From the IMG/VR virus record IMGVR_UViG_3300010389_000001, positions 1-64,000 of that record: a DNA stretch of 64,000 bases; one strand, 5' to 3'. The notes beneath the pieces are model-generated. The model was not told the DNA's origin. It ran no database searches and saw only the letters and a list, made by a program, of their open reading frames with translations. The translations under genes and the position numbers were made by a program. Numbering within the stretch: position 1 is the first letter of the stretch; every line of letters starts with the position of its first letter. Of this stretch, positions 1-21,007 are shown piece after piece.

Positions 1-44
1 CACGTAAGGAGTCGTCGGCAGCGTCAGATGTGTATAAGAGACAG
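1..44 (+). other. Illumina Nextera i5 adapter/index plus Tn5 mosaic end (sequencing artefact)
   Basis: CAC-GTAAGGAG-TCGTCGGCAGCGTCAGATGTGTATAAGAGACAG is the end of P5, an 8-nt index and the Nextera read-1 adapter. Confidence 0.97.
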
Positions 45-3108: not shown

Positions 3109-3704
3109 GAGTTGGGAGATTTAATTTCTTTAAAAGATTGGGCGGCCAGGGCCAAAGAAGCCAAAGAAGCCAAAGATCCAAGCAAGCCTCTTTATCCCAT
3201 TCTTTTTTTAACCCCAACCCAATGGGATATCCTTTTGGAAAACCAAACCCTCCCCGCCATTCTTTTTTTAACCGAAGAAGAAATTGATGCCCTGCCCCAA
3301 ACCATCCCCGACCCAAATGAATTAAAGAAAGAAAAAAGAGCCCTTTCCGTGGCCGCGCTTCTTTGGGCCATGACGCCCAAGGGCTAACCCCCAAAAGCAA
3401 TCCAAATTAAATTATCCCGGGTTTAATTTTTTGATAAGAAATAATAAATTCCCCGGTGTAATAAGAAAGGTTAAGATCTAAAGATTCCCCAATACTATAA
3501 GAAATAGAAATCCTCTCTCGCACCAAAGTTATTTCTTATTAAGCATAAGTCTTACCTAACCAAATAAGACGGAGCTTTTATATTAAAGATCTAACCATAT
3601 ACCCATAGATTTCCCTTTAAGCTAAAGAAATGTTTTATTTCTTATGGGTTAGCCATAATGCAAAACCTTAGTCTGTTTATAGTGCAGAATCTTATTAGGG
3701 TAGG

Positions 3705-3832
3705 CTGCAAAGCTTTAATGGATTTAAAAAAACTGCAAAGCTTTATTTGGGATATACTGCAAAGCTTAAAAAAACTGCATAGCTTTATTTAATGCAGAAA
3801 ACTGCAAAGCTTAAAAAAACTGCAAATCTTTT
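3705..3832 (+). repeat. About six direct repeats of CTGCAAAGCTT in AT-rich non-coding DNA
   Basis: Copies or variants at 3705, 3733, 3757, 3775, 3802, 3820. Confidence 0.8.
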
Positions 3833-3893
3833 TTGGTGCAGAAAATGGGGGTGACGGAGGTACCGCGCTGGCGCGCGGTGTCAAGTGGGAATA

Positions 3894-4071
3894 TGTCATA
3901 TAATTGTAAAAATTTGGTCAAATGTTTGTCAAGCAAATGTCAAGAGAATGTCAAGTGTCAAAAGGTTGTCAAGTGTTTGTAAAGTGTTTGTCAAAAGGTT
4001 GTAAAGCAAATGTCAAAAGTATGTCAAAGTTATGTGACGGGCTGTCACACATTTGTCACACGACTGTCACA
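3894..4071 (+). repeat. Array of 17 TGTCA-like pentamers at an 11-bp period (Pho-box-like)
   Basis: Units at 3894, 3905, 3916, 3927, 3938, 3949 / 3956, 3967, 3978, 3989, 4000, 4011, 4022, 4033 / 4043, 4054, 4065. Confidence 0.85.
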
Positions 4072-4078
4072 TAAGAAA

Positions 4079-4107
4079 TTGATCTCATATCCTAGTCCGG
4101 TTATATA
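4079..4107 (+). promoter_or_regulatory. First copy of the conserved phage promoter TTG-N5-TATCC-N6-GGTTATA
   Basis: TTGATC, 17-bp spacer, TATATA; the motif recurs before most early genes (5316, 5887, 6616, 7073, 8587, 9310, 10516, 11314, 12330, 12835, 15362, 15968, 17257 and later variants). Confidence 0.8.
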
Positions 4108-4153
4108 GTTGGCGAGGGGGCAACGCTTCACCCGCCCCGCTCTGGAGGTTCCC

Positions 4154-5074
4154 ATGGCCGTTGCATCCAAGCGTATCGTCGAGAACACCCTGGTCGCGAC
4201 CCTCGCGGCTCGCGGGTGGGCAGCAGGGGGTTCCCCCCTGGCCCAATCGTGGGCCACCGGTTGGGCGGCCCGTTGGGCCGTCGCTATCGAGGCGTCCTCC
4301 GAACGGGGGGAAGGCAAGTACAATTACACCCTGCTCGCCGAGCCCTTCAATTGCGGGCGTGGTATGCAGGTCTGGGATGCTGCATCCCCTAGCGGTCTCC
4401 TGCTGTCTATCAAGGGCAGTGCGAACCCGGACGCCATGCCGGGTACGGTCCACGTTACCACGGGGAAGCCCGTGGAGGGTGTTATCTCGGCGGCGCGCCG
4501 TGGAGCGCGCATCCCCATTGCCTTCGCTCGGGGCTACGTCGCGCCGGGCTCCGTTCCGGCCGGTACGGAGGGGGCTATCCGCCCCGCCGAAGGGGTGCAG
4601 GTCAAGGTGTTTGACCTGGGTCCTGCAATCCGTGCGTGCGCGGATATTCGAGTCCGTCGTGAGCGGGGGCACGGTGATACCGTGTATTTCGGGATCACCA
4701 GCGCGGGATACCGCGTTCTAAAGGTGAACCTGGCGCACCTCCGGCCCCTCACCGGGTGGCTGGACGCCGCCGGCCTGGACGCATGGGCGAGCGACCAGCC
4801 GGTGGGCTGGTCCAGGAAGGACCGGCACGCTGTCGCCCAAAAAGCCGGAGTCCGGTTGTTCACCAACCACCAGGTGCGCGTGGCCGGGCGCCACGTCTGC
4901 ACGCTTCAGCCGGAAGAGGCAGCCCTCCTTCGGCAGCTCCTCGACGCCCCCGAGGGCGAGTACGTCCGCTTCTGCCGAGTGCAGAAGAACAAGCTCGCTA
5001 ACAAGCTGCGCGGGCATGTGTCCATCCAGAGCAAGAGGAAGACTAAGAAGTGCGAAGGGGGCTACTACCTCTAG
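4154..5074 (+). CDS. Hypothetical protein with possible OmpR/PhoB-type winged-helix C-terminus
   Basis: GGAGGT RBS; C-terminal QVRVAGRHVCTLQPEEAALLRQLL...KLANKL...IQSKRK...GGYYL resembles Trans_reg_C, with a shortened central helix. Confidence 0.55.
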   Translation: MAVASKRIVENTLVATLAARGWAAGGSPLAQSWATGWAARWAVAIEASSERGEGKYNYTLLAEPFNCGRGMQVWDAASPSGLLLSIKGSANPDAMPGTVHVTTGKPVEGVISAARRGARIPIAFARGYVAPGSVPAGTEGAIRPAEGVQVKVFDLGPAIRACADIRVRRERGHGDTVYFGITSAGYRVLKVNLAHLRPLTGWLDAAGLDAWASDQPVGWSRKDRHAVAQKAGVRLFTNHQVRVAGRHVCTLQPEEAALLRQLLDAPEGEYVRFCRVQKNKLANKLRGHVSIQSKRKTKKCEGGYYL

Positions 5075-5099
5075 CCCCCGGGCGTCCTCACGCCCATAC

Positions 5100-5137
5100 G
5101 CCCATCGATCCCCCCGGGGGTCGGTGGGCTTTTTTTT
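5100..5137 (+). terminator. Rho-independent terminator
   Basis: GC-rich hairpin and T8 tract after the stop codon. Confidence 0.7.
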
Positions 5138-5366
5138 GTAAACATTTTGCCCCCCCATGGGGGCGTGTGTGCTCGCTCCCTACGGTCGCCGGGCAAACTG
5201 TTTACATAAGCAAGTGTCAAGAAAGGGTCAAGAAAGCTTGACGCTTGTGCGTATGCGGTTAGGGCTCCCTTTCTTTCGTTGGGGCAATCTGTTTACACAA
5301 GCATGTGAGCAAAAATTGATCTCTTATCCTAGTCGGGTTATATGGTAGTGTAAGAAGGAGCAAGCA

Positions 5367-5690
5367 ATGCAGCCTGAAGCCCCCCACACCCTTCCACACC
5401 CGCCTGCAGGCTGGGTGTGGGAATTCGAAACTTTCCCAAGCGGATGGGTCGAGGTAGACGGACTCGTGTCCGCGCTCGATGCCGATGGGCCGCGCGTGTC
5501 CATCTTCGAGCCGGGCGTCGACCCTGCCGAGGACCTCGATTGGGAAATTATCCTTAGCGCTTCGCGCGTGGACGCGGACGAGGAAAACAACCTCGCTCGC
5601 GAAGAGTTCCCCCGGGGGACCCCGCGCGAGGTGGTGCTGGCCTGCGCAGTGGAGCTAGCTCGCTCATTCGTGAGCCTTAGCCAGCCCTGA
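5367..5690 (+). CDS. Hypothetical early protein
   Basis: Conserved promoter at 5316 and AAGGAG RBS. Confidence 0.7.
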   Translation: MQPEAPHTLPHPPAGWVWEFETFPSGWVEVDGLVSALDADGPRVSIFEPGVDPAEDLDWEIILSASRVDADEENNLAREEFPRGTPREVVLACAVELARSFVSLSQP

Positions 5691-5934
5691 CGGCCCCCCC
5701 CGGGTAGCAAGAGCTACCCGGGGGCATTGTTCGCTCTGGAATTGTAAACATTTTGCCCGGGGCATCCAGCCCCCGTGACGGCCTCCGGTGGGCGGCTGGG
5801 CAATCTATTTACATAAGCATGTGATGCTTCGGGCAAAATAGTTACATAGAGTTACACGCGTGCGGGCAAACCATTTACAGAGATTATTGATCTCTTATCC
5901 TAGTCGGGTTATATAGAAGTGTAAGGAGGTTGCC

Positions 5935-6432
5935 ATGCTGAACACCCGAGAAACCCAGCCCACCCTGATTATCGTCAGGGGACTCCCGGGCGCGGGCAAG
6001 AGCACCATCGCCGAGGAATTCGGCGCGCCCGTGCGGGAAGCTGACAAGTTTCCCGGGCTCTACACGTACCACTCCGATGGGCGCGTGGAGTTCCACGGCA
6101 TGAGCCGCATCGAGGGGATGCCGATGATAGCCAGGGCTCACACCTGGTGTCAAAACCAGGTTCGCGAAGACTTGTCTCGGCTGCCGCCTGTGGCGGTCGT
6201 TGCGAATACTTTCACGCAGGGCTGGGAGTTTGCGCCCTACGTGGAGATTGCGAAGGCTGCGGGAGCCCGCATTGTTGTTATCGACGTGTTCGATTCGGGC
6301 TACACCGATGAGGAGTTGGCCGACCGGAACACCCATGGTGTTCCCGAGCACGTTATCGCCCGTATGCGGGCCAATTGGGAGACCGATTGGCGAGCCGCCG
6401 ACCCCCGGCCCCCTTGGGAGAGGGGAGAGTAG
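5935..6432 (+). CDS. P-loop kinase/ATPase (AAA_33-like)
   Basis: Walker A RGLPGAGKST; VVANTF and RNTHGVP motifs. Confidence 0.85.
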   Translation: MLNTRETQPTLIIVRGLPGAGKSTIAEEFGAPVREADKFPGLYTYHSDGRVEFHGMSRIEGMPMIARAHTWCQNQVREDLSRLPPVAVVANTFTQGWEFAPYVEIAKAAGARIVVIDVFDSGYTDEELADRNTHGVPEHVIARMRANWETDWRAADPRPPWERGE

Positions 6433-6663
6433 GAGCCGCCCCTCCGGGGGCAATCCATTTACATAAGTGTGTAAACATTTTGCCCGGGTCTTTGACTGGA
6501 GCTGGCCTCCCGCCGGGCAATCTATTTACATAAGCATGTTATGCTTCGGGCAAAATGGTTACACAAGTTATACAGGGTCTCGGGCAAAATGGTTACAAAA
6601 GCATGTGAGCAATAATTGCTCTCTTATCCTAGTCGGGTTATAGGGTAGTGTAAGGAGGTTACC

Positions 6664-6978
6664 ATGGGAAACAAGGTTGTGGTTAATAGCTGCTACGGCG
6701 GCTTCAATCTGTCCGAGGACGCGAAGCGGCTGTTCAATCAGATCCAGATTGACCGGCACCTGCCGGTCACGGATTGGGATGCGATCTGGGTGGGCGACAT
6801 CCCGAGGCACCACCCGATCCTGGTTCGGGTGGTGGAGCTGCTGGGCGAGAGGGCCGGAGAACGCTACTCCGATCTCCGGGTCGTGGAGATTCCTGGGAAT
6901 CAGTACCTGATTTCCGAGTATGATGGATTTGAGTCGATCCAGACTCCGGAGGGGATGAACTGGACCTTCATTGACTGA
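6664..6978 (+). CDS. Conserved phage hypothetical protein
   Basis: KVVVNSCYGGFNLS, RHHPILVRVVE, EYDGFE; own promoter and RBS. Confidence 0.75.
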   Translation: MGNKVVVNSCYGGFNLSEDAKRLFNQIQIDRHLPVTDWDAIWVGDIPRHHPILVRVVELLGERAGERYSDLRVVEIPGNQYLISEYDGFESIQTPEGMNWTFID

Positions 6979-7123
6979 GGGTCGCCCCTCCGGGGCAATC
7001 TATTTACATAAGTATGTAAACAGTTTGCCCGAGCATTCCTTGGGAGCCCAGGCAATCTATTTACTCAGATTATTGATCTCTTATCCTAGTCGGGTTATAG
7101 GATAGTGTGAAAAGGAGAAGGCA

Positions 7124-7348
7124 ATGCCCTACGCTGACGACGGACAACTCTACCGCGCGCGAATCAGTGAAATCCTCTCGCGCCTGAACGAGATGCGCGA
7201 TGCACAGCTCCAGCGCACGCTGGAGGCCGCTCGCAGCGGCAATATGGTTGATCCGACGGTGATCGAGTATGATCACCAGAGCGCCGTGTACGAGATGCTC
7301 GCGGACGCCATCCAGGTGGTGGTGGAGGTGGCCTACGCTCCCCGGTAG
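7124..7348 (+). CDS. Hypothetical early protein
   Basis: Promoter at 7073 and AGGAG RBS. Confidence 0.7.
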   Translation: MPYADDGQLYRARISEILSRLNEMRDAQLQRTLEAARSGNMVDPTVIEYDHQSAVYEMLADAIQVVVEVAYAPR

Positions 7349-7544
7349 GCCGGCGCTCCGTCTGGAGGCCCCTCGCGGGGCAATCTGTTTACATACTTAT
7401 GTAACTATTTTGCCCGAGGCAGCGTTGTGATATTCGGGCAATCTATTTACATAAGTGCTCTGCCTTGAAAAGCAAAATATTTACAGAGAAATTCATTGAC
7501 TCTCACAGCTCACCTTGTTATGATAATGAAGTAAGGAGGTTTCC

Positions 7545-7898
7545 ATGACTGATTACGCCGACCTTGTTTCTCAGGCCGACCGGGCGCGGGCAGACATCGC
7601 GCACCTTCATCAACTCCATCTTTGGGACGGGGTTGACGTGTCAGCGGCGCTGGCTATGGCAGAGAAGCATCTAGTATGGATTGAGGAGCAGCTCACCGCT
7701 GCTACCATCGAGGTCATTCATGACATCGGCACGGCCCGCTGGAAGGAGCTTCCGGTGCCCGAAGTCTACAGCCCCGAATGGGAGAAATATTCTGCCCTCT
7801 CGCAGAAGCTTGACTCTGCTCGCCGCTACCTCGCCCAGCTCCGGCAGCTCGGCTTCCCGGCAGTACGCTGGTACCACGCTCCCCGCTTCCATGGCTAG
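7545..7898 (+). CDS. Hypothetical early protein
   Basis: TAAGGAGGT RBS; TTGACT-type promoter upstream. Confidence 0.7.
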   Translation: MTDYADLVSQADRARADIAHLHQLHLWDGVDVSAALAMAEKHLVWIEEQLTAATIEVIHDIGTARWKELPVPEVYSPEWEKYSALSQKLDSARRYLAQLRQLGFPAVRWYHAPRFHG

Positions 7899-8073
7899 CG
7901 GGGGGTTTCCCAGAATTGTAAATGATTTGCCCCGGGACTCTGTCCCGGGCCCCGGCTTCCAGCCGGGCAATCTATTTACATAAATGCGCTCCTTTGAAAA
8001 GAAAAATATTTACAGAGAAATCTGTTGCCCCTTTTGGTCAGCTCTGTTATGTAAGTAGAGTAAGGAGGACACT

Positions 8074-8451
8074 ATGTCGGTTCACACTTTTGAATCCTTC
8101 GAACTCTTTCACCACCTTCCGGCGGATGCCCTCGCGGGCCTGCCATTCGCGGTGGCGGAGAAAATGGATTTGGATTTCGTCGAGTGGGGCGGCGTCCATG
8201 GCGAGATCAGCGCGAAGCGCCTCGCGGACGCTGGCATCGAGGATCTCTCTAAGTGGGAGGTTATCGGAGGCAAGCTCATCGACCACAGCGGTTGGTGTGA
8301 CTTCGAGCAGAAAATGGAGTTTCACTATGAGGATCTTCGGATCCTAGTGCGCAAGTCTCATCTCGCGGAAGCCCAGCGGGCTTTCTGCGATGGCCCAGCT
8401 CTGACCCATAATCCTTTTGCGGCCGCTCTCTCGAATCTTCGGGGAGGCTGA
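8074..8451 (+). CDS. Hypothetical early protein
   Basis: TAAGGAGG RBS. Confidence 0.7.
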   Translation: MSVHTFESFELFHHLPADALAGLPFAVAEKMDLDFVEWGGVHGEISAKRLADAGIEDLSKWEVIGGKLIDHSGWCDFEQKMEFHYEDLRILVRKSHLAEAQRAFCDGPALTHNPFAAALSNLRGG

Positions 8452-8639
8452 GGCCTCCGGCCGGGCAAATTATTTACTTAAGTGTGTAAATGGTTTGCCC
8501 GGGTCTTTGGCTAGAGCCGGCCTCCGGCCGGGCAAACCATTTACCGTAATCTGTATGGTGTTCGGGCAATCTATTTACAGAGATTATTGATCCCTTATCC
8601 TAGTCGGGTTATGAGGCAGTGTGAACCCAGGAGGACACC

Positions 8640-8846
8640 ATGGCACGCATCCGCACCACTTACCAGCCCACTCCCGGCGCCAGCGAGGACCAGGTCCTCC
8701 AAATCGCATTTCGGTGCGGCCGGGACCTCGACCCCGACGATCGCCGTGCGCGGTGGATCGATGCCCTCGATGGCGCAGCCTACACGGCTGCGGTGGAGGC
8801 CTACCATGCAGGCCAGGCCGAGGCCTATGAGTGTGAGGGCTGGTAG
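8640..8846 (+). CDS. Hypothetical early protein
   Basis: Promoter at 8587 and AGGAGG RBS. Confidence 0.65.
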   Translation: MARIRTTYQPTPGASEDQVLQIAFRCGRDLDPDDRRARWIDALDGAAYTAAVEAYHAGQAEAYECEGW

Positions 8847-8915
8847 CCACCGGCCCGGCCGGGCAAACTATTTACAGAGTAAACATTTTGTTTTGCAAAT
8901 AGTTTGCCCCGGGGC

Positions 8916-9125
8916 TCAGTCTCCCTTGACGGTGCCCCGACAAGCCTTCCGGCTTTGCTCCTTTCGAGCATCCCCGTGGGATCCGGCCCGTCCAGAGTTC
9001 CCGAGAATCATCCCGAGCACTTCGAGGTTCCGTCGAGCCGGGGCAATTTGTTTACCGTTTTCCATTGCCCTCCGACGGGCGCGAGCCTTCCGAGCCTTCC
9101 GACGTTGCTTGTTTGAGCGCGACAT
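8916..9125 (-). CDS. Small Arg-rich basic protein (inverted module)
   Basis: AGGAGGT RBS on the minus strand; MSRSNKQRRKARKARARRR. Confidence 0.6.
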   Translation of the reverse strand: MSRSNKQRRKARKARARRRAMENGKQIAPARRNLEVLGMILGNSGRAGSHGDARKEQSRKACRGTVKGD

Positions 9126-9362
9126 GGCTACCTCCTAAGGAGGATTAACACGATGAACCGGGAAGGCTAGGAGAAATATCATCCGGGCAAATTATTTACA
9201 AATCCTTATTCGGGTGTCGGGCAAACTATTTACAAAGGCGTGTCAAGGCTTCGGGCAAACTATTTACACAAGTTGCACAGGGCTTCGAACAAAATGTTTA
9301 CATAGAAAATTGATCTCTTATCCTAGTCCGGTTATGTAGTAGTGCCACGAAGGAGAAGTATC

Positions 9363-10265
9363 ATGGCTAAGGCATCGACCCTGATTGAAGAAACCGACGC
9401 CCGTATCGCGGAGGGCATCATCGCGAGCATCGATGACGCGGAAGCCCGTGGCGTCAAGTGGGTCCCCGGGTGGGACCGTTCGGCTGGGTTCCCCTCGAAC
9501 CCGGTTACGGGCCGCCAGTATGGCGGAAACTACAACGGGCTCGTGCTGCTGATTGCAGCATCGCAATTCGGCGACAGCCGGTTCGCTGGCCGTAGCCAGT
9601 GGCGAACCAAGGGGAATGTCATTCCCCGGGACACCATTGGGACGAAAATCTTCTTTCCCCGGTTTGTGTGCGTCAAGTGCAACAAGATCGCGGGATTCGC
9701 GAAGAAGTGCTCCGGTTGTGGAGCCCAATTCAAGCGATACACCGACAAGCGGTGCATCGGCTTTGGCGAGTCTGAGGTTTTCAACAATTTGCAAGGCGAA
9801 ACCCCGTTGCCCGAGGCCGGGTCCGATTGGGAAGTTACGTGCGAGGAAGCTCGCAAGATTGTGGAGAAGGCTGGCGCGGATGTCCGCCACGGCGGTGGGC
9901 GTGCGTTCTACTCCCCGAAGGAGGACCGTATTCAGCTTCCCGAGATGGCTTCCTTTCACGATGAAGCGGCCTACTGGGCCACGAGCTTGCACGAGCATGC
10001 ACACTGGACCGGCCATAAGACGCGGCTCGCCCGTCCTGGCATCGTCAACATGACGGGCTTTGGTTCGGCCGAGTACGCATACGAGGAGCTTGTGGCGGAA
10101 ATTTCCGCGAGCTTCCTGTGCAAGCATGCGGGTGTGCAGCGTGAGGGTCTTGACGACCAGCATGCTGCCTACCTCGCCAGCTGGCGAAAGGCTCTGAGCG
10201 ACGACCCTTCCATCATCCGCAAGGCAGCGGGGGAAGCTGGCAAGGTGCTCCGCTACCTGACCTGA
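9363..10265 (+). CDS. ardC: ArdC-like antirestriction/ssDNA-binding protein (DUF1738 plus zincin domain) with a Zn-ribbon insert
   Basis: NPVTGRQYGG.N, AFYSPKEDRIQLP, LHEHAHWTGH, YAYEELVAE, HAAYLASW; CxxC...CxxC insert. Confidence 0.88.
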   Translation: MAKASTLIEETDARIAEGIIASIDDAEARGVKWVPGWDRSAGFPSNPVTGRQYGGNYNGLVLLIAASQFGDSRFAGRSQWRTKGNVIPRDTIGTKIFFPRFVCVKCNKIAGFAKKCSGCGAQFKRYTDKRCIGFGESEVFNNLQGETPLPEAGSDWEVTCEEARKIVEKAGADVRHGGGRAFYSPKEDRIQLPEMASFHDEAAYWATSLHEHAHWTGHKTRLARPGIVNMTGFGSAEYAYEELVAEISASFLCKHAGVQREGLDDQHAAYLASWRKALSDDPSIIRKAAGEAGKVLRYLT

Positions 10266-10563
10266 TCTGCCCGGCCCCGGGAATTCCCGGGGCCTTTCGC
10301 GCTCGTGTGAATGTAAATATTTTGTTTGCCGGAAATGTAAATGATTTGCCCGGGGTCGTGCCCCGATCCGGCCTGCGGCCGGGGCAAAATGTTTACGTAA
10401 GTGTGTAAAAAGAGGGTAAATTTGTAGGCAAAGTATTTACACAGAGTCACTCACACGCAGGCAAATCATTTACATTCTCTTTGCCTTCCTTCGGGCAATC
10501 TATTTACATAGAAAATTGATCTCTTATCCTAGTTGGGTTATAGGGTAGTGTAGGGAGGTTCCG

Positions 10564-10764
10564 ATGGATTGGCAAAGGTTGATTGCTCTGGCGATGATTG
10601 CAGAGCAGGTTGATGCTTGGCTCACAGCTAAGGTTTGCCTGGCCTTCTTCCAAAAGAATGGCATGGAAATTTCTGAAGATATGTGGCAAGAAGCCGCAAA
10701 GCTGGATATGGAGCTAGAAGGAATGATGATGACGGCCGACGGCTGGATATCCGGGGAAGCGTGA
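10564..10764 (+). CDS. Hypothetical early protein
   Basis: Promoter at 10516 and GGAGGT RBS. Confidence 0.6.
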   Translation: MDWQRLIALAMIAEQVDAWLTAKVCLAFFQKNGMEISEDMWQEAAKLDMELEGMMMTADGWISGEA

Positions 10765-10895
10765 GAAACCTGGGTCGGGGGGAGAGGGTGACTCCCCCCG
10801 GCCTCTCACCGCTCTGTAAATTGTTTGCCCGGGCTTTCCCCATTTTTTATTGCGCTTTTTCTCTGAATCGGTTATCAGTCTTGTAGGAGGTAGCG

Positions 10896-11081
10896 ATGGA
10901 AAAGCATTCCACCCACATCCGGTGCGCGTTCTGCGGCTGGAAAGCACTCAAGTTCCGCAAGCTAAAGTCTGGAAAGACTCGCGGCCCGGATGCAGCCTTT
11001 CAGATGCTGTTTAACCATGCGGCCGCGCATCATCCGGAGCAATTTGACAAGGCTTTTCCCGACCGCTTTGAGGAGGAGTGA
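10896..11081 (+). CDS. Small C2H2-type zinc-binding protein
   Basis: CAFC...HAAAHH; AGGAGGT RBS. Confidence 0.55.
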   Translation: MEKHSTHIRCAFCGWKALKFRKLKSGKTRGPDAAFQMLFNHAAAHHPEQFDKAFPDRFEEE

Positions 11082-11381
11082 GTCGGGGGGTAAATTATTT
11101 ACACAAGCGTGTAAATAGATTGCCTGGATGGCTGATGGATATTGTGGCTTCATTCGGGCAATCTATTTACATAATTAGACCCAACCCTCTGGGCAATCTA
11201 TTTACATTGCCTTCCCATCGTTCGGGCAAAATAGTTACCTAATCCATTTCTCTCCCGGGGCAAACTGTTTACACAATCGCCTTGGTCCCCGGGCAAACTG
11301 TTTACATAGAAAATTGATCTCTTATCCTAGTCGGGTTATATGGTAGCGTGAGGGACGAACCCTCGCAGGAGGTAAACAACA

Positions 11382-11783
11382 ATGGCTAACATCTTCACCA
11401 CCGAGACCACCGAGAGCGCCGTCCAGAACATCAAGGGCACCATGCGCGTGTACCGCGACGACGACGGAGAGGCTTACGTCTCTTTTGCAACGAACAAGGG
11501 GAAGGGCAGCGGTGCCCAGGTTATCCCCGTCGCTGAATTCGCCGATTGCGTTGCAGCCTTGGCGGAAATTTCTTCCAACGGTCTGCCTGAAGTGGAGGAG
11601 GAAATCTCTACCTCCGAGTCGATTCGTCGCACGGCAGCTCTGTCCGATGGGGTTATTTCCTTCCGGGTTCGCTCCGGAAAGGGAGCTAAGCCTGCCAAGG
11701 TTTCCAGCGATGAACTTGCCGACGTGGTAAAGCTTCTCCAGGGAACCGTCAAGGCTGTGGAGAAAGCAGCGAAGGATCTCTAG
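11382..11783 (+). CDS. Tandem-domain GKG protein, paralog 1
   Basis: SFATNKGKGSGAQVIP and SFRVRSGKGAKPAKV internal repeat; paralogs at 17372 and 34141. Confidence 0.8.
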   Translation: MANIFTTETTESAVQNIKGTMRVYRDDDGEAYVSFATNKGKGSGAQVIPVAEFADCVAALAEISSNGLPEVEEEISTSESIRRTAALSDGVISFRVRSGKGAKPAKVSSDELADVVKLLQGTVKAVEKAAKDL

Positions 11784-12377
11784 AGCGAAGGCCCATGGCA
11801 CGCGGGCTAAAGCGTGCCGCCCCTTGGGGCGTATGCCTGAAATGTAAATAAATTGCCCGGGGAGGTGCGCGTGCTTGCAAACGTGCTGGACCTTTCTAAC
11901 GCTCATGTTCCGGGCCCAACTCCAAATTGGGGACGGGTGCGCGTGGTTGAGCATGAATTCGGATGGATTGTCTTTATCTCTGGTGACCTTGGAGATAGGG
12001 AGGCCCGTCGAACGGTTCCCGATTGGATGCTTGGAATTTGGAAGCATGCTGTAAATGAGGGCTGCATCGCTGTCATATTCGACAGAGACGCGGACGTGGA
12101 TGATCGTTTTCTGAAATTCAATTGGTGAGCTAATGGAAGGTCGGCGAAAGCCGAACTTCCTTTCTTTGTTTTCTGTAAACATTTTGCCTGAGCTTCTTTG
12201 TAAATATTTTGCCCGGGCTTGTGTGTTGGTATCCGGAAAGCAAGGGGATATTACTTATCAGGTAATATCCCCGGGCAAAACGTTTACTTAATTGGTGCGC
12301 ACACGCAGGCAAACTGTTTACTCAGAAAATTGCTCTCTTATCCTAGTTGGGTTATAGGGTAGCGTAAGGAGGTTGAG

Positions 12378-12680
12378 ATGAGCAACTTGGTTGGTGCGCC
12401 GGAAGAGGTTTTGGTTGTCCACAGGCTTCTTGTGGAAAACGCTGAGGAAGCAGGGTACGATGCCTCCTTTGTGTATTGTCGCGAAGAGAGGTGCTATCCT
12501 GACTACGAGCCTTCGGGAAATTGGCTCGTCGGGCCAAACATGGAAGGCTTCGGAGGCACCATGGTTCGCACGTCTGCTGGTAATTGGTTTTACCGCGAGG
12601 CATGGAGCGGCGAGGACATCCCGATGAAGGCTGGCTTTGAAGAAGCCAAGTCCGATGCATCATGCTGGTTCACGGGGTGA
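12378..12680 (+). CDS. Hypothetical early protein
   Basis: Promoter at 12330 and RBS. Confidence 0.65.
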   Translation: MSNLVGAPEEVLVVHRLLVENAEEAGYDASFVYCREERCYPDYEPSGNWLVGPNMEGFGGTMVRTSAGNWFYREAWSGEDIPMKAGFEEAKSDASCWFTG

Positions 12681-13034
12681 CCCGCCCCTCCGGGGCAATC
12701 TATTTACAGAGCCTCCGGGCAAAATGTTTGCAAAACAAAATGTTTACCCTGTAAATAGATTGCCCGGTGGCTTTGGCTCAAACAAAATATTTACTTATCT
12801 CTGAGCCAGCAGGGCAAATCATTTACATAGAAAATTGATCTCTTATCCTAGTTCGGTTATATGGTAGCGTAAGGAGGTTGGAATGGAATGGACGGAAATT
12901 TACGTGGCTATCTACAGGGCTACGTGCGATAGGTGCGGGCATGCGGGTCAAGGTTGGTTCTGGATTAAGGGGACCCATGATAGGGGAACCCTCTGCATTG
13001 ACTGTTACCACCGGCAAGGTTAAGGGAGGCTCCT

Positions 13035-14097
13035 ATGGAAGATGAATTGGAATATCACCAATGCGACCGTGATTCGTCTTGGTGGGAAAATGATTATCAG
13101 GGAATTCCCCTTGCGAGGGTTTGCGATAGATGTTATGAAGCTAAGATGGCACGTTTCCGTCCGGAGATTCTCACCGGGTATTCTCAAGGCGACGTTGACG
13201 AGCCAATCGACCCCGATTGGTAATGGGTCGCCTGATTCCTTCTAAAGAATTGGATAAAGCAACACGCACAAGAGGTTTATCATGGCAAACTCAGACGTGA
13301 TCAAGGCATGGGTCCGCGAGGAAGCGTGCAGTTCACAAAACCTTAGCACCGATGGTATTTCTCTTTGGAGTTATCGTCTTAAGATTGGAGATACTATCTG
13401 CGGAAAGAAGGTCGTGTATGACCACACGTCCAATGGTCTAGGGTTTGTTTCCAGAACAACATCTAAGCATGTGGGTCTCGCTAAGTATGAATGCTCCAAG
13501 TAAACCAGGCTGGTATTGGTATAATGATGGTGGAGAATGGGAGGTAGTATTGGTTAGGGGAAATAAATTCCTTTACGTCAAGAGGCTTTCGGGTTATACT
13601 CAGTCGGGCGTGCCACTCTCATGCGTGCGTGGAACTTGGGGCTCTGAAGTTAAGCGAGGTGAATAATGGGCATCACAATCTTTCTAGAAGAAGAATACGG
13701 CTACCGTTACTGGCTGTGGGAAACGGGCATGGACGCGGAAGCGCTCATGTGGTGGTGGTCTAGCCTTTCCTCTGTCGATGAATACTTCTTCGATCCTACA
13801 GGGCTTCCTGGAAAGCTTACGCAGCTGTTTGACTTTACGGACACGCTTGTGGCTAACGTCCTCTCTGAAGATATTGAAGAGGATATTAAGAATAAGAAGC
13901 TAGAAAAGCTGTTTCGCAGTAATCCTATCTGGATTAAGAGCGGAGATATGGGCTATGACCCTCACGCGACCCATGTGGACGTGCCTGGACTAACGGACGG
14001 GTGGACCGCGCACGTCCACATGAACGATGATTCATGGATTAAGCCGCCTGGTAATAAAGAGATATGCCTTGGAGGTAACGATGGTTCGAACCGCTAG
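13035..14097 (+). CDS. Cluster of small hypothetical proteins (13035-13223, 13282-13503, ~13487-13666, 13666-14097)
   Basis: Tightly packed ORFs with RBSs after the promoter at 12835. Confidence 0.55.
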
Positions 14098-14818
14098 AAC
14101 CCTTGGTTACATAATCCTTAGCTTTCTGGATTATGTGGCCGAAAGAAGAGATAGCAGAGTGGGCATTAAAGATGCTGTTCAATCTGCTTTGAGACGCCCG
14201 GTTTAATCCGGGCTTTGTTGTGCCTTTCTTTGGCCTTATTACTTAGCTAAGTAATAAGCTCAGGCAAAATGTTTACTTAAATCTGAGATTCCCTCGGGCA
14301 AAATATTTACATTAAATGTGAGAACTACTTACATTCCATCGGGCAAATTGTTTACTTAACCAGTAAGAGGCCATTACATAACATAGTAAATGGTTTGCCC
14401 GGCGCGCTTTTTGTTTTCTATCTTTTCTGAATAATTAAGACTCAAGTTATTATTTGGGAAATAAATAATAACTTAACTCTACCTTAATAGGGGCTAATGA
14501 TTATTTTTCAAAATCCATTTAATCATCCAAGTCGCGGTAACCAGATGAGGATTCTCTGGATTGTTAATATGAAGGTTTCTTAGAAGCCAGCGAAGATTAG
14601 GATTCGTTAGATTCTTTCTCATTTGGGGAACCGACATTTGATCCAAAACCTTTTGGAGTTCCGCCTTCTGATTGGTCAGATCCTTAACAGACATAATCTA
14701 TAGCCCTCTTTGTTAAAAGATTTCTACTGGTTTGTTTTGTTATTTGACTTGCTTTGTTAGATGCCCCTCGCGCGGGGGGCGAGAAGGGGGCGTGTGCGCG
14801 CGGAAGAACGCGTTAGCT

Positions 14819-15028
14819 TTACGGGCTTTTTTCTCTTTTTGAAGCTCCGGGCGGAGTCGGGCTGATCTTCTTTCGGATCCTTAGCTTTTCTTGAATATCT
14901 AACTCACACATCCCACAACATGATCCAGCTCCGGAAGCTTGAGTTATTTCATGAAGATCCTTTGCTCCCCTGTCAATTAAGGCCTCTACTGCTTTGTCTG
15001 TAATTCCTTTGCAGATGCAGAGTATCAT
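14819..15028 (-). CDS. bfd: Bacterioferritin-associated ferredoxin-like [2Fe-2S] protein
   Basis: MILCICKGIT...GAGSCCGMC matches the BFD CxC...CxxC pattern. Confidence 0.8.
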   Translation of the reverse strand: MILCICKGITDKAVEALIDRGAKDLHEITQASGAGSCCGMCELDIQEKLRIRKKISPTPPGASKREKSP

Positions 15029-15409
15029 TGCTTTGCCTTTTTGGGGAGTCCCCTTGTTAAGTGTATAATAAATTACCAGATTGATTTTGTCAACTATTTT
15101 TTTTAAAAAGTTATTCCGACCATTGCGAGCCCGATGTAATCTATCTTTCTTTGATCTTCTGCCCGGTTATTTGCGGGGCAAAAAAAGTTGTAAAAAAATT
15201 CTTTTGTCTTTTTAATCATTTTCTTTTCGCCTTTCTAATCTTTATTTATTTTGGCTGCGGCTAGCCGCCGGTTGCCCCTGGGGTTTTTATAACCCGTTTT
15301 CCTCATGGCCGCCCCATTTTTTTGGAGCCAACCCTATGGGGCAAAATATTAACAGAAAAAATTGATCTCTTATCCTAGTCGGGTTATATAGAGGTGCAGG
15401 GAGGTTGGA

Positions 15410-15736
15410 ATGGGACTTGACCAATACGCTTTTGCTGTGAAGGACGATGAGCGGATCGAGATTATGTACTGGAGGAAGCATGCCAACCTCGAAGGTTGGA
15501 TGGCTGATCTTTATAAGCAACGCGGTGGAAAGGGGCAGTTTAACTGCGTTGACTTGAAGCTCTTTGAAGATGATATTCTTCGATTGAGAAAAGAGCATCG
15601 TGAGCTTCGCAAGGCTTCCGGGTTCTTTTGGGGTGAATCAAGTCTGGCAAAGGTGGAAAATACTCACGAGTTTATTCAGAAGGCTTTGCAATATCAGAGC
15701 GAAGGCTATGATATTATCTACACCTCCTGGTGGTAG
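15410..15736 (+). CDS. Conserved phage hypothetical protein
   Basis: MGLDQY...YWRKHANLEGWM...GFFWG...YTSWW; promoter at 15362. Confidence 0.75.
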   Translation: MGLDQYAFAVKDDERIEIMYWRKHANLEGWMADLYKQRGGKGQFNCVDLKLFEDDILRLRKEHRELRKASGFFWGESSLAKVENTHEFIQKALQYQSEGYDIIYTSWW

Positions 15737-16427
15737 GGATTGTTAGCAATAAAGCTAGCTACTTTATTGCGGCATAATGGGCGAGAGTTACTCCGGGGTT
15801 CGACTCCCCGGTCGTCAAGAGACGGAATTTGGCCAGTAACCACTCGGTTTCTAAATAAGCGTTGTGGCTAATGCTTATTTAGAGGCGAAGGGAAAGGCGG
15901 GTTATGAAGCCACTTGTAACCCGCCCGACCCTGACCCAGCCGCTGGGCAATCTATTTACCGAAATTATTGCTCTCTTATCCTAGTTCGGTTATAGGGTAG
16001 TGTGGGAGGTGATCGATGGAATGGACGGCTACTTCAATTCTCTCCGGGGTCGAGCGGACCTTGGTTGTCCCTGGCTTGACCGAGGACGCCGTAACCCGTT
16101 GGCAGGCCGGTGAGCTAATCCAGAATGCTATGCCGGATATTGATCCGGAGTGGCGCGAGTTTGTTATGACCGGGATTACTCCCGATGAATGGACCAATCT
16201 TATTGGCGAGGGAGGTGAGTGATGGCCTTTGGAATTCGTCGCCGCAGTCGGAACAGTGATGCTTACGAAGTTTGTATCACCAATATGTATGGAATGGTTC
16301 GACTAGAAGATTTCTGGTCGCCATATAAGGGTGCTACAAAAGAAGAGTGTGAAGAGTATATCGAGCGGATTAAAGCCGCATCAAAAGAGATTGAGAAAGA
16401 TATTCTCGGAAGGAGAAGGAGAGGTGA

Positions 16428-16700
16428 GTGATGGAAGGTAATGCTGATAATGAGCGTCCCTTGTGGAGCCCTTCTCCGCGTCAATCTCCGCCATCATATG
16501 GAGAGGTTCCTCTTCAATTGCTTCGCTGGGGATTGGGGCGCGGAGAGTTTACTAGCCGTCAAGCTTCAGAGGGACTTAATGTTGCTTATCGTGTCGCGGT
16601 TAGAGGGGTAAATAAACTCGCCGATCTTGGATTGGCTGTTGACGTTGGAAAGGATCGGCAAGCCACGCTGTGGACCGTTTCTGTTTCCTGGTCTGATTAA
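16428..16700 (+). CDS. Possible winged-helix DNA-binding protein
   Basis: FTSRQASEGLNVAYRVAVRGVNKLADLGLAV is HTH-like. Confidence 0.45.
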   Translation: MMEGNADNERPLWSPSPRQSPPSYGEVPLQLLRWGLGRGEFTSRQASEGLNVAYRVAVRGVNKLADLGLAVDVGKDRQATLWTVSVSWSD

Positions 16701-16855
16701 CTAATTCCTCCGGGGTAAGATCTTGGCATCTACCCCGCCGGGGCAAACTATTTACAAAGCCCCGGGGCAAAACATTTACAAAACAAAATATTTACATTGT
16801 AAATGTTTTGCCCCGGCCTTGTTACTTCGCGAAGTAACAAGGCCTTTGAGGCTTT

Positions 16856-17140
16856 TTATTCCGCCCTCACAACCTCCCCTGTAAACATCCCATAGACAAC
16901 CTCTAGGAGATTTTCTTTCCCAAGGTCTTCGGGGTTTACATAATTCCCCCATGGCACAGGAGACGTGGTGTAAGTGCCATTCCACTCGCCACCTAGAATC
17001 ATGACAGTTTCCTCATGAGACTTGGGGACAGTTACCATAGTGTCTCCCCTCTTATATGAGACTCCAACACGGGTCAGTTGCATAGCAGACTTCTCAAAGC
17101 CAAGCTTCCGCATCCGGGCAAAAAAGCTACGTCGGGTCAT
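16856..17140 (-). CDS. Hypothetical protein (inverted module)
   Basis: Conserved promoter on the minus strand at 17161-17187 and AGGAGGT RBS. Confidence 0.7.
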   Translation of the reverse strand: MTRRSFFARMRKLGFEKSAMQLTRVGVSYKRGDTMVTVPKSHEETVMILGGEWNGTYTTSPVPWGNYVNPEDLGKENLLEVVYGMFTGEVVRAE

Positions 17141-17371
17141 GGGCTACCTCCTACGCCTCTACATAACCCGACTAGGATAAGAGGCAAATAATTTGGGGCG
17201 GGGCCTCCGGGCAAACTATTTACATAATCCCAGGGGCAAACTGTTTACCGAAATTATTGACCTCTTATCCTAGTTCGGTTATATGGTAGTGTGAGGAGGG
17301 GGAGGCAGAAAAAAGCGAAAAACGCTTGACCCCTCATCGCCAGCCTGTTAATCCACCGTAGGAGGTATCCG

Positions 17372-17803
17372 ATGGCTAACATCTTCAGCAACGACAGCAA
17401 CGAGAGCCCGCTCACCGTTATCCGCCAGACCATGAGCGTTTCGCTCGACGACGGGGGAACCCCGGTTGTCAGCTTTGCCACGAACCGTGGCAAGGGTTCG
17501 GGCGCCCAGACCATGCCGGTCGACCAGTTTGATGCCTATGTGGCTACTCTGGAGGGTTACGTCGCTGATGGCATTCCAGAGGGAACGCCAGAGGAAAACC
17601 TGACTGCTGCGGAGTCTGTGACCCGCACTATCAAGCTGGATGACGGGGTTATCTCGTTCCGTGTCCGGTCTGGTAAGGGCGCGAAGCCCGCGAAGATTCC
17701 TTCCGAGGACTTCGCGGAGACTGTCAAGCTGCTTCGCTCGACTGTTGCGGCCGTTCAGTCTGCGGGGGAGGGCCTTACCTCTTCCGATGACAGCGACGAG
17801 TAA
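17372..17803 (+). CDS. Tandem-domain GKG protein, paralog 2
   Basis: High similarity to 11382-11783. Confidence 0.8.
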   Translation: MANIFSNDSNESPLTVIRQTMSVSLDDGGTPVVSFATNRGKGSGAQTMPVDQFDAYVATLEGYVADGIPEGTPEENLTAAESVTRTIKLDDGVISFRVRSGKGAKPAKIPSEDFAETVKLLRSTVAAVQSAGEGLTSSDDSDE

Positions 17804-17856
17804 ACGCTCGCACACCCGCTGGCACACCGGGTAAAGTGTGCCACGTTTTATTAACC

Positions 17857-17890
17857 GGGGGAGCGCGACTTTTCGCGCTCCCCCTTTTTT
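17857..17890 (+). terminator. Rho-independent terminator
   Basis: GGGGGAGCGCGA/TCGCGCTCCCCC stem and T-tract. Confidence 0.75.
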
Positions 17891-18293
17891 GTGTCCGCGC
17901 GCCAGTTTATGTAAACATTTTGTTTCCCCTTATCTAAGGGTCGACCACATGCGCCCGCGCAAAATATTTACAAAACTTGGGGCAAAATGTTTACAAAGGC
18001 TAAATGAAAATGATTTTCAATTAGATTACTATGTAATATAGAATAAAATGAATTTTTATATTATATATACTATGTAATAGTAATATTTCAGGGGCCTAAG
18101 AATTTTTCTGGTTAGCCCTTTAGTCCGCATCATTCTCAGGGCAATCTGTTTACACAAAGTTCTGATCCACCCTGTAAAGAGATTGTGAAGGCAGCCAGGA
18201 ATTTCTTGCACCATATCCCGGCTCGGTTATATGTAGGCGAGGGTAGCGAAGCACGCCAAACCCTCGCAACATAGAAAGAAGGGATAAGACGTT

Positions 18294-18746
18294 ATGTCCA
18301 AGACTCCTAGTGACCTCTCTCCAGTTGAAGCTATGGCCCTTGCTCAAGCTATCCGTATCTCGGATTGCAATGATGTTTCTGCTTTGCCGGAACAGACCTC
18401 TCAACCCGTGGACTTTACTGTCCATGTAAAGGGGAATGTTACGCGCGGCGTAGGCACTCCCAGGCGGGGCACTAACCGCGCACGTACGAGCGCAAGCATG
18501 ATCATGCTACTTGTGTCCTCTGGCGTTACTCGCAACCACTCTCCACGTCAGATTATCGAGAAGTGGTCAGAGATTGGCACGCTTGATAAGGATGGTTTCA
18601 GCCTTCTCTATGAGTCTCTTTCCGATGAAGAGAGGGCGCTTTATGATGAGTGCATCTCTCTTTTTGAACAAGAGATTGTTGGAAAGCTGCCTCTTATCCC
18701 TGTAAAGGGTGGAGTAAAGTTTAAGGGTAACATTACAAAAGAATAA
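18294..18746 (+). CDS. Hypothetical protein
   Basis: Follows the promoter variant at 18206. Confidence 0.65.
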   Translation: MSKTPSDLSPVEAMALAQAIRISDCNDVSALPEQTSQPVDFTVHVKGNVTRGVGTPRRGTNRARTSASMIMLLVSSGVTRNHSPRQIIEKWSEIGTLDKDGFSLLYESLSDEERALYDECISLFEQEIVGKLPLIPVKGGVKFKGNITKE

Positions 18747-18841
18747 GGTTATGGCGCCCCGTTTGGGGCGCCTTTAACCGGCTCTTAAACTTTATTGCAT
18801 CATATCCAGGCTCGGTTATAGGTAAGTGTAGGGAGGTTACC

Positions 18842-21003: not shown

Positions 21004-21007
21004 TCCA

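What the first reader, a model, noticed from the sequence alone, without database searches (positions are those of the whole stretch)
3894..5074. Giant 11-bp-phased TGTCA (Pho-box-like) array in front of a gene with an OmpR/PhoB-like winged-helix C-terminus
Seen: 17 TGTCA/TGTAA units at an 11-bp period in three registers, ending CTGTCACACATTTGTCACACGACTGTCACAT just before the first conserved promoter. That promoter drives a 306-aa protein ending ...LQPEEAALLRQLL...KLANKL...IQSKRK...GGYYL. Known: PhoB/OmpR regulators bind TGTCA direct repeats with an 11-bp period, normally only a few units. Inference: this is the master switch of the early region, either sensing or sequestering host PhoB or autoregulated by a phage wHTH protein, which would also be the best candidate binder of the downstream boxes. 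On the minus strand many units read TTGACA (sigma70 -35), so an RNAP decoy is an alternative.
Basis: partly seen in the sequence, partly recalled or inferred. Interest (0 to 1): 0.85.

Follow-up and report, generated by a model that had tools for sequence, protein, structure and literature searches.

The report
Giant repeat operator before phage early gene
A huge uncultured phage carries 17 one-helical-turn TGTCA repeats directly before its first early promoter, and the gene behind that promoter encodes a stripped-down relative of the bacterial PhoB/OmpR DNA-binding domain, so this is probably an oversized self-regulating switch, not a proven phosphate sensor.

Summary
Positions 3894-4075 carry 17 TGTCA-type units at an 11-bp period in three registers. 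Core bases are near-invariant and spacers near-random. The array ends 10 bp before the first of 14 near-identical early promoters.

The 306-aa product of gene 1 (4154-5074) has a C-terminal domain homologous to OmpR/PhoB effector domains (hhalign 95.8 %, E 8e-9). It lacks helix alpha2 and the sigma-contacting loop, and it has no receiver domain. Its N-terminal 220 residues match nothing known.

Relatives keep the gene at the same place, but the repeats differ by lineage: 3 TGTCA units, 3 units 22 and 44 bp apart, a hexamer array, or TGCCAA units. The giant array is an expansion seen only in the window's own lineage. A near-identical phage (flanks 93-97 % identical) carries a gene-1 allele only 33 % identical.

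The best reading is that Gp1 lines up head-to-tail on the array and autoregulates P1, most likely by repression (confidence about 0.4). Binding by host PhoB, an iteron origin and a terminus or packaging role are not excluded. TGTCA is no commoner than a control word among 11-bp arrays in viral contigs. I file it as a new variant of a known kind, of moderate interest.

The parts
3431..3645 (.). ATAAGAAATA-type short repeats, direct and inverted, in the AT-rich leader; one further copy at 4070-4079 touches P1
   Evidence: the repeat finder families D13, I1, I2, I4, I8-I10. GATAAGA blocks lie at the same relative place in L120 and L125.
3695..3845 (+). Second repeat family: about 7 copies of CTGCAAAGCTT with A-runs and TGCAGAA inverted partners (period about 45)
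   Evidence: TRF rows 3724-3845; the repeat finder D3, D4, D9, D10.
3847..3879 (+). Conserved GC-rich element: GGGGGTGACGGAGG followed by a 7-bp-stem GC hairpin
   Evidence: Read. The same element precedes the TGTCA units in L125/L126/L130. Related ACGG(A/T)G plus GC-palindrome elements occur in L120 and L134.
3894..3955 (+). Array block I: six 11-bp units (TGTCATATAAT, TGTAAAAATTT, GGTCAAATGTT, three TGTCAAG; the last is cut to 7 bp)
   Evidence: The TGTCATATAA unit is shared with the L125 lineage.
3956..4042 (+). Array block II: eight units (TGTCAAR / TGTAAAG / TGTGAC), with a 33-bp (three-unit) super-period
   Evidence: (period 33, 2.2 copies).
4043..4075 (+). Array block III: three CTGTCACA-type units. 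The last one sits where the other 13 promoters have the TTTACA half of their box.
   Evidence: Best match to the E. coli 18-mer pho box is 15/18 at 4042. About 93 % identical in L132.
3903..3932 (-). Consensus-like sigma-70 promoter on the minus strand, made of two array units (TTGACA, 18 nt, TACAAT)
   Evidence: 11 of 12 matches, but 1 site found against 1.6 expected. No counterpart in L125.
4079..4112 (+). P1, the first of 14 copies of the conserved early promoter
   Evidence: 14 matches against 0 expected, all on the + strand, 4079-17283; aligned.
4154..5074 (+). Gene 1, 306 aa. Residues 1-224 form an unassigned alpha/beta domain (invariant G68, D75, G81, K87). Residues about 225-306 (nt 4826-5071) form an OmpR/PhoB-type winged-helix domain lacking alpha2.
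5100..5139 (+). Intrinsic terminator closing the single-gene unit P1-gene 1
   Evidence: 13-pair stem followed by T8. Identical in L132.
5215..5241 (+). Small TGTCAAG cluster downstream of gene 1: two direct units 11 bp apart and one inverted unit
   Evidence: 100 % conserved in L132.

Best explanation
The array is an expanded tandem operator at the upstream edge of the early region. Host RNA polymerase fires P1 after injection. P1 drives a single gene whose product, Gp1, carries an OmpR/PhoB-type winged-helix domain. Such domains bind head-to-tail, one monomer per 11-bp direct repeat, so Gp1 is expected to line up cooperatively on the three blocks of units until it reaches the TGTCACA units that abut the -35 region. 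Gp1 lacks the alpha2/alpha3 loop through which PhoB-type activators contact sigma. The likely outcome is therefore autorepression or insulation of P1, with the many sites acting as a buffer or timer for free Gp1. Shown: the array and its statistics; its position relative to P1; the single-gene unit; the homology and the deletion in the domain; lineage-specific repeats next to a fast-evolving gene. Inferred: that Gp1 is the binder, that binding is cooperative, and the sign of regulation.
For: The array is real, and its core is conserved while its spacers are free, as expected for protein-binding sites and not for recent slippage. The C-terminal profile hits only OmpR/PhoB domains at the top of the PDB list (PmrA/BasR 2m87, E 9.8e-4). 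Profile-profile comparison with six E. coli effector domains gives 95.8 % probability and E 8e-9. One family member touches Pfam Trans_reg_C at E 0.011. The AlphaFold model with 12 sequences (pLDDT 88.8) has the four-strand sheet, alpha1, a recognition helix and a wing hairpin. Atlas structure neighbours are response regulators. PhoB effector domains bind 11-nt direct repeats head-to-tail, and do so constitutively without the receiver (PMC4415409). P1 is the only one of the 14 promoters without the GGGCAA-N4-TTTACA box, and it has a TGTCACA unit in that place. Gene 1 is its own transcription unit, with a TGTCAAG cluster on each side. Across relatives the box and promoter plan are conserved, but the repeats next to gene 1 change along with gene 1. 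P0001 and P0004 share the same array and, alone in the family, a basic KRKTK..GGYY wing insertion. No other early ORF tested has a recognisable DNA-binding domain.
Against: There are no binding data. A near-identical phage (L132) keeps the array at about 93 % identity while its Gp1 is only 33 % identical, and the recognition helices differ. TGTCA units persist in lineages whose Gp1 is 25-40 % identical. Both facts would fit a constant binder, from the host or from another phage gene, at least as well. Loss of alpha2 might impair DNA binding. Whole-chain Foldseek found no winged-helix hit. Seventeen sites for an autoregulator is without precedent that I know of.
Confidence: 0.4

Rival explanations
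1. A host OmpR/PhoB-family response regulator, PhoB itself if the host is a proteobacterium, binds the array. The first early unit is thereby tied to phosphate or another host signal, or the array soaks up the host regulator.
For: The unit has the formal anatomy of a PHO box repeat: 11 nt, TGTCA core, freer 4-nt tail (PMC4415409). TGTCATATAA matches the CTGTCATAAAT unit in the E. coli phoB promoter as read. Best 18-mer match is 15/18. The motif stays constant while Gp1 diverges or is swapped, as expected for a constant host binder.
Against: The host is unknown, and no relatives were found in species genomes. PHO box consensus differs between phyla (PMC4415409). The array lies upstream of the -35 hexamer, not in its place. 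Some lineages have non-TGTCA repeats at the same spot. TGTCA is not enriched among 11-bp arrays in viral contigs: 19 loci against 29 for the control.
Confidence: 0.15
2. The 700-bp leader is a replication origin. The repeats are iterons, and Gp1 is the initiator that also autoregulates, as in P1 RepA/oriR or iteron plasmids.
For: Three repeat families lie in a 66-76 % AT leader next to a gene for a winged-helix protein. L120 has 22-bp repeats, the classical iteron spacing. L120 and L134 have a promoter copy firing leftward into the repeats, which recalls transcription-primed origins.
Against: Gp1 shows no similarity to any Rep family. There are no DnaA boxes within one mismatch. Cumulative GC skew does not turn here. 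An essential initiator would not be expected to be swapped for a 33 %-identical allele on an unchanged origin. The window has no leftward copy of the early promoter.
Confidence: 0.1
3. The leader marks the physical start of the genome, or a packaging or end-protection site. The repeats are then bound by a terminase small subunit, a virion protein or another phage protein, not by Gp1.
For: The leader sits at the junction between late or accessory genes and the first early genes, where defined ends usually lie. A conserved GC-rich element lies in AT-rich DNA. Many assemblies end within 30-170 bp upstream of gene 1 or inside the array.
Against: Three long contigs run straight through the region. 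No terminal repeat was detected. The assembly breaks are equally explained by the repeated promoter and array.
Confidence: 0.1
4. The giant size has little function of its own. A three-unit site was amplified by slippage or unequal recombination, possibly serving only as upstream bent DNA or as a weak sink of -35-like hexamers for RNA polymerase.
For: Relatives manage with 3-4 units. A 33-bp super-period points to module duplication. Eleven-bp tandem arrays of any word are fairly common in viral contigs. Nine units read TTGACA on the minus strand.
Against: The units have diverged in their spacers while keeping the core, so the array is old and under selection, unlike the near-perfect young arrays found in the survey. 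The promoter-proximal part is about 93 % conserved in L132, next to a gene only 33 % identical.
Confidence: 0.15

Closest known systems
PhoB and PHO boxes (E. coli pstS, phoB and others)
   Same: Direct repeats of 11 nt with a TGTCA core and a freer tail. Bound head-to-tail by an OmpR/PhoB winged-helix domain to which Gp1's C-terminus is homologous (PMC4415409).
   Different: PHO promoters have 2-6 units that replace the -35 element. Here 17 units lie upstream of it. Gp1 has no receiver domain and no alpha2 or transactivation loop, so it cannot work as a phosphorylation-controlled, sigma-contacting activator (PMC3973317).
ToxR and the TTTTGAT heptad repeats of the ctxAB promoter on CTX phage
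   Same: A variable number of short tandem repeats upstream of a phage-borne promoter that recruit transcriptional activators (bioRxiv 10.1101/2021.05.14.444153). That ToxR is one of them and belongs to the OmpR/PhoB family is my own knowledge, not checked here. Copy number differs between strains there and between lineages here.
   Different: The period is 7 bp, the repeat number is much smaller (3-8 from memory, not read here), the regulator is host-encoded and membrane-bound, and the phage is filamentous and temperate.
Phage Mu repressor c and operators O1-O3 (my own knowledge, not checked here)
   Same: About a dozen copies of a roughly 11-bp consensus spread over about 200 bp next to the early promoter. 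They are bound cooperatively by a phage winged-helix protein that shuts early transcription.
   Different: The Mu sites are not strictly phased, the repressor gene is divergent from the early promoter, and the DNA-binding domain belongs to a different winged-helix family.
ParR and parC of plasmid R1 (my own knowledge, not checked here)
   Same: Ten 11-bp direct repeats flank the promoter of the operon that encodes the binder. The protein coats the repeats as a filament and autoregulates.
   Different: ParR is a ribbon-helix-helix protein, the system is a centromere paired with an actin-like motor, and no motor gene lies next to gene 1.
Iteron origins with an adjacent rep gene (P1 RepA/oriR, F RepE; my own knowledge)
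   Same: An array of direct repeats immediately upstream of the promoter of a gene for a winged-helix protein of about 300 aa, with autoregulation.
   Different: Iterons are 17-22 bp at two-turn spacing. Gp1 has no Rep-family similarity and no DnaA boxes are present.

Membership tests
OmpR/PhoB-type winged-helix effector domain (Pfam Trans_reg_C, PF00486) | Match to the curated Pfam model at its gathering score | tested here: not met
   No Trans_reg_C hit for the window protein at E up to 10. One of 8 relatives hits it at E 0.011, below the cut-off.
OmpR/PhoB-type winged-helix effector domain (Pfam Trans_reg_C, PF00486) | Detectable homology to bona fide members | tested here: met
   Profile of 12 C-termini against PDB: the top eight hits are all OmpR/PhoB domains, best E 9.8e-4. 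hhalign against PhoB, OmpR, BasR, CpxR, PhoP and KdpE domains: 95.8 %, E 8e-9, 62 columns.
OmpR/PhoB-type winged-helix effector domain (Pfam Trans_reg_C, PF00486) | Full topology: four-strand sheet, alpha1, beta5, alpha2, alpha3, C-terminal hairpin | tested here: not met
   The model has strands at 226-250, a helix at 253-264, a helix at 275-284 and a hairpin at 292-305. About 18 residues covering alpha2 and the alpha2-alpha3 loop are absent in every alignment.
OmpR/PhoB-type winged-helix effector domain (Pfam Trans_reg_C, PF00486) | Binds direct repeats one helical turn apart | not testable with these tools
   Needs EMSA, footprinting or DAP-seq.
Two-component response regulator, OmpR/PhoB subfamily | N-terminal receiver domain with a phospho-acceptor aspartate | tested here: not met
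   No Response_reg hit in any of 8-12 members. The N-terminal 224 residues have no significant sequence or fold match.
PHO box (PhoB operator) | Two or more 11-nt direct repeats, 7 conserved (CTGTCAT-like) plus 4 less conserved | tested here: met
   17 units; core 1.0-2.0 bits, tail 0.1-0.7 bits. Best 18-mer match 15/18. Definition taken from PMC4415409.
PHO box (PhoB operator) | Takes the place of the -35 element of the regulated promoter (my own knowledge) | tested here: not met
   The last unit ends at 4075 and the -35-like TTGATC is at 4079-4084.
PHO box (PhoB operator) | Bound by host PhoB~P; phosphate-dependent expression | not testable with these tools
   The host is unknown. The genome scan found no relatives.
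Iteron-type replication origin with cognate initiator | Adjacent gene belongs to a known initiator family | tested here: not met
   No Rep-type hit in Pfam, PHROGs or NCBIfam.
Iteron-type replication origin with cognate initiator | DnaA boxes and an AT-rich unwinding element next to the iterons | tested here: inconclusive
   The leader is 66-76 % AT, but has no DnaA box within one mismatch. The host consensus is unknown.
PD-(D/E)xK nuclease fold (N-terminal domain, considered only) | Significant structural or sequence match, and a D...(D/E)xK catalytic motif | tested here: inconclusive
   D75 and K87 are invariant and E50 nearly so, but the middle acid is S/Q/A. Restriction enzymes (SwaI, SfiI, MspJI, EcoRV) appear among Foldseek hits only at E > 1.

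The most novel reading that the evidence does not exclude
Gp1 and its repeats form a previously undescribed control module of huge phages. In this reading a receiver-less, alpha2-less PhoB-type DNA binder, fused to a new (possibly nuclease-like) domain, polymerises on a one-turn-period array into a long nucleoprotein filament at the entry end of the early region. The filament sets the timing, boundary or identity of early expression. The binder gene is exchanged between otherwise identical phages as part of phage-phage or phage-host conflict.
Probability: 0.15. Interest if true: 0.7.

Novelty: new variant of a known kind. Interest (0 to 1): 0.5.

Why it matters
Almost nothing is known about how uncultured huge phages start their early programme. 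This locus offers a defined, testable promoter-operator-regulator unit: a 180-bp array, one promoter and one 306-aa protein. It would show how a two-component effector domain was taken over by a phage without its receiver and without its sigma-contacting loop. The contrast between an extremely variable gene 1 and nearly invariant flanks also marks gene 1 as a likely conflict gene. The array explains why assemblies of this phage group tend to break at this point.

Tried and rejected
- **Cultured relatives:** DNA and protein searches of the GenBank phage collection found none.
- **Word-indexed protein search:** it found only the query. The exhaustive HMMER search was needed to find relatives.
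- **Single-sequence AlphaFold:** the model was useless, pLDDT 34.
- **Whole-chain Foldseek:** nothing significant against PDB or BFVD.
- **Lambda Cro resemblance:** residues about 102-144 match at E 0.06. This covers one helix plus a hairpin, and I did not pursue it.
- **Box pattern scan of viral contigs:** almost only chance single hits.
- **Terminal repeat:** none found with the first bases after the adapter.
- **Alignment scans:** The genome scan with A8 found no relatives, so there is no host clue.
- **Site scans of the leader:** DnaA boxes are absent, and IHF-like matches are one-mismatch by-products of the unit. A CRP-like TGTGA..TCACA at 4033-4049 has the wrong spacing (read by eye).
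- **Coding potential of the array:** ORFs at 3833-3982 and 3922-4074 were rejected. They have no Shine-Dalgarno sequence, and relatives with three units have no such ORF.
- **Minus-strand sigma-70-like promoter:** no more than chance, and absent in L125.
- **Context of similar arrays in other viral contigs:** heterogeneous (transposase, head protein, ParB-like), so it gives no functional clue.
- **Recognition-helix covariation:** K at the position aligned to PhoB R201 occurs in three TGTCA lineages and T in three non-TGTCA lineages, but N occurs in L132. There are too few lineages to count as evidence.

Full report
**Where the window comes from**

The window is the first 64 kb of a 232.5-kb IMG/VR contig, IMGVR_UViG_3300010389_000001. 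It is a huge phage. It carries seven or eight tRNA genes and a tmRNA. It also encodes a class II aminoacyl-tRNA synthetase, asparagine synthase, glutamine synthetase, a Ro/TROVE-like protein, DNA ligase, UvdE and a sigma factor. No cultured phage is close.

Base composition is in three parts:
- 33-40 % G+C up to about 3900;
- 55-65 % from 4000 to about 12000;
- about 42 % afterwards.

The finding sits exactly at the first boundary.

Thirteen exact TGTCA lie on the + strand between 3879 and 4069. The word is not over-represented in the window as a whole: 66 found, 79 expected. With one-mismatch variants there are 17 units, and one further unit sits at 3879:

| Block | Positions | Units | Step to next block |
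|---|---|---|---|
| I | 3894-3949 | 6 | 7 bp |
| II | 3956-4033 | 8 | 10 bp |
| III (TGTCACA) | 4043-4065 | 3 | – |

Identity at lag 11 is 0.59, against at most 0.415 in 5000 dinucleotide shuffles, with echoes at lags 22 and 33. The core columns T-G-T-(C/A)-A hold 1.0-2.0 bits, and the last four columns hold 0.1-0.7 bits. This is the pattern of selected binding sites. It is unlike the near-perfect, young 11-mer arrays I found elsewhere. A 33-bp super-period suggests growth by duplication of three-unit modules.

**The surroundings**

The array is the last of three repeat families in a 700-bp, 66-76 % AT leader:
- ATAAGAAATA motifs at 3431-3645;
- about seven CTGCAAAGCTT units at 3695-3845;
- a conserved GC-rich element with a hairpin at 3847-3879;
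- then the TGTCA units.

Ten bases after the last unit begins P1, the first of 14 copies of a 27-34-nt promoter. All copies are on the + strand between 4079 and 17283, against none expected by chance.

All 13 other copies have the box GGGCAA-N4-TTTAC(A) upstream of the TTGATC hexamer, 11 at 7 nt and 2 at 19 nt. P1 alone lacks the box and has the last CTGTCACA unit at that position. P1, gene 1 (4154-5074, with a GGAGG Shine-Dalgarno sequence) and a strong terminator (5100-5139) form a single-gene unit. A small cluster of two direct and one inverted TGTCAAG-type units follows at 5215-5241.

**The protein**

Standard searches found nothing. An exhaustive HMMER search found seven relatives at 27-40 % identity, and a profile search added four.

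*C-terminal domain.* The evidence for an OmpR/PhoB-type effector domain is as follows:
- The family consensus of the last 80 residues reads like an OmpR/PhoB effector domain.
- Its profile hits only such domains at the top of the PDB list: PmrA/BasR E 9.8e-4, then ArlR, and PhoB further down.
- I fetched six E. coli effector domains from the K-12 record. Profile-profile comparison gives 95.8 % probability and E 8e-9 over 62 columns.
- One member touches Pfam Trans_reg_C at E 0.011.
- ESM Atlas structure neighbours are response regulators.

Every alignment shows the same gap of about 18 residues, covering helix alpha2 and the alpha2-alpha3 loop. The AlphaFold model built on 12 sequences (pLDDT 88.8, pTM 0.81) has the four-strand sheet, alpha1, one further helix and the wing hairpin, but no alpha2. 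In PhoB and PmrA that loop carries the acidic patch that contacts sigma region 4 (PMC3973317). Gp1 therefore looks like a binder, not a PhoB-type activator.

*N-terminal domain.* There is no receiver domain. Residues 1-224 match nothing significantly. Invariant D75 and K87, together with weak restriction-enzyme hits, hint at a PD-(D/E)xK-like fold. This is unproven.

**Relatives**

Gene 1 always opens a GC-rich early region and is followed by small ORFs, an AAA_33 kinase-like gene and an ArdC-like gene. The box and the general promoter plan are conserved. The repeats in front of gene 1 are not:

| Lineage | Repeats upstream of gene 1 |
|---|---|
| L125/L126/L130 | exactly three TGTCA units at 11 bp, after the same GC-rich element |
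| L120 | three TTGTCAAC units 22 and 44 bp apart, plus one GGTCAAC |
| L134 | eight RTGRGA hexamers, no TGTCA |
| L124, L128 | ATGCCAA units in either orientation |

The giant array is therefore an expansion seen only in the window's own lineage, from a small, variable site.

L132 is the most informative relative. Its sequence is about 93 % identical through the last six units, P1 and the leader. It is 97 % identical from the stop codon of gene 1 onward. Its gene 1, however, is only 33 % identical at the protein level. Within the family, the two alleles share a basic wing insertion (KRKTK..GGYY) found in no other member.

**How unusual is such an array?**

- At least 118 IMG/VR loci have four or more exact TGTCA at 11-bp spacing. 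The longest run seen was 11 units.
- Only 19 loci have six or more.
- A control word of the same composition gives 29 loci.

One-turn tandem arrays are thus a general feature of viral DNA, and TGTCA is not favoured. The TGTCA core alone is therefore weak evidence for PhoB. Seventeen diverged units with a conserved core remain rare.

**Interpretation**

The most economical model is that Gp1 binds the array head-to-tail, as PhoB effector domains do on 11-nt repeats, and as they do constitutively when freed of the receiver (PMC4415409). It would thereby autoregulate P1, probably negatively.

In favour:
- the fit between domain type and site geometry;
- the unique architecture of P1;
- the single-gene unit flanked by TGTCAAG clusters;
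- variable repeats that travel with a variable gene while the boxes stay constant.

Against:
- there are no binding data;
- the L132 allele swap happened on an unchanged array;
- TGTCA persists across very divergent Gp1 proteins, which would suit a constant host binder such as PhoB.

An iteron origin is weakened by the absence of Rep similarity, DnaA boxes or a skew change. A genome-end or packaging role cannot be excluded. Many short assemblies stop within 170 bp upstream of gene 1 or inside the array, but three long contigs read through. The idea that Gp1 binds the downstream boxes is not favoured, because the boxes are conserved where Gp1 is not.

**Verdict**

The feature is real and statistically solid. 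I file it as a new variant of a known kind: a tandem direct-repeat operator for an OmpR/PhoB-type domain. What is new is its size, a receiver-less and alpha2-less binder, and a huge-phage setting. Interest is moderate.

Noticed in passing
window 12-44: The contig starts with an Illumina Nextera transposase adapter (TCGTCGGCAGCGTCAGATGTGTATAAGAGACAG, recognised from my own knowledge). The first listed ORF (30-452) is partly adapter, and the contig start is an assembly artefact.
   Followed up: partly
window 5137-21749 (a few up to 35522): About 60-80 copies of a box cGGGCAA(A/T)(C/A)T(A/G)TTTACA, in both orientations and often as inverted pairs, lie in early intergenic regions. One sits 7 nt (twice 19 nt) upstream of each of promoters 2-14. 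The same box (GGCAA-N4-TTTAC) is conserved in all relatives. Its binder is unknown.
   Followed up: partly
window 4079-17283: There are fourteen near-identical 27-34-nt promoters. Their TATA(T/G)G region is not a good sigma-70 -10 element, and they end in ...TTATAGGGTAGTG, which recalls single-subunit RNA-polymerase promoters. Which polymerase reads them is open.
   Followed up: no
window 4000-12000 against the rest; L120 8000-16888: The early region is 55-65 % G+C in a 42 % genome that carries tRNAs for A/U-ending codons. Relatives show the same shift. Early genes may be tuned to a GC-rich host before the phage tRNAs are made.
   Followed up: no
L132 1-1468 against window 4005-5420: Gene 1 is replaced by a 33 %-identical allele between flanks that are 93-97 % identical. 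The breakpoints lie at the start and stop codons. This looks like a hypervariable first early gene, as seen for anti-defence or exclusion genes.
   Followed up: yes
L120 7853-7945; L134 about 1497-1590: In two lineages P1 is paired with a perfect inverted copy of itself that points leftward into the repeat region. The window has no such copy.
   Followed up: partly
L122, L123, L124, L127, L128, L129, L131, L132, L135: Nine independent short contigs end 30-170 bp upstream of gene 1 or inside the array. L128 and L129, from different assemblies, end at the same base. The cause is either repeat-induced assembly breaks or a physical end.
   Followed up: partly
window 32530-32740 and about 44500-44780: Dense CTGCT/GCTGCT repeats. 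At 32.5 kb they encode alanine-rich repeats (AAYAA, AASAA) inside an ORF. The stretch at 44.5 kb was not read.
   Followed up: no
window 52650-53026: A phage-borne tmRNA with tag ANNNYHYNSVALAA. The ORF called at 52979-53992 overlaps its 3' end.
   Followed up: no
L155 2520-2660 (IMGVR_UViG_3300025677_000243): An unrelated 23.7-kb viral contig has a very similar TGTCAAAAGGTTGTCAAAAAT-type 11-bp array, between a DDE transposase gene and a RecE-like exonuclease gene.
   Followed up: partly
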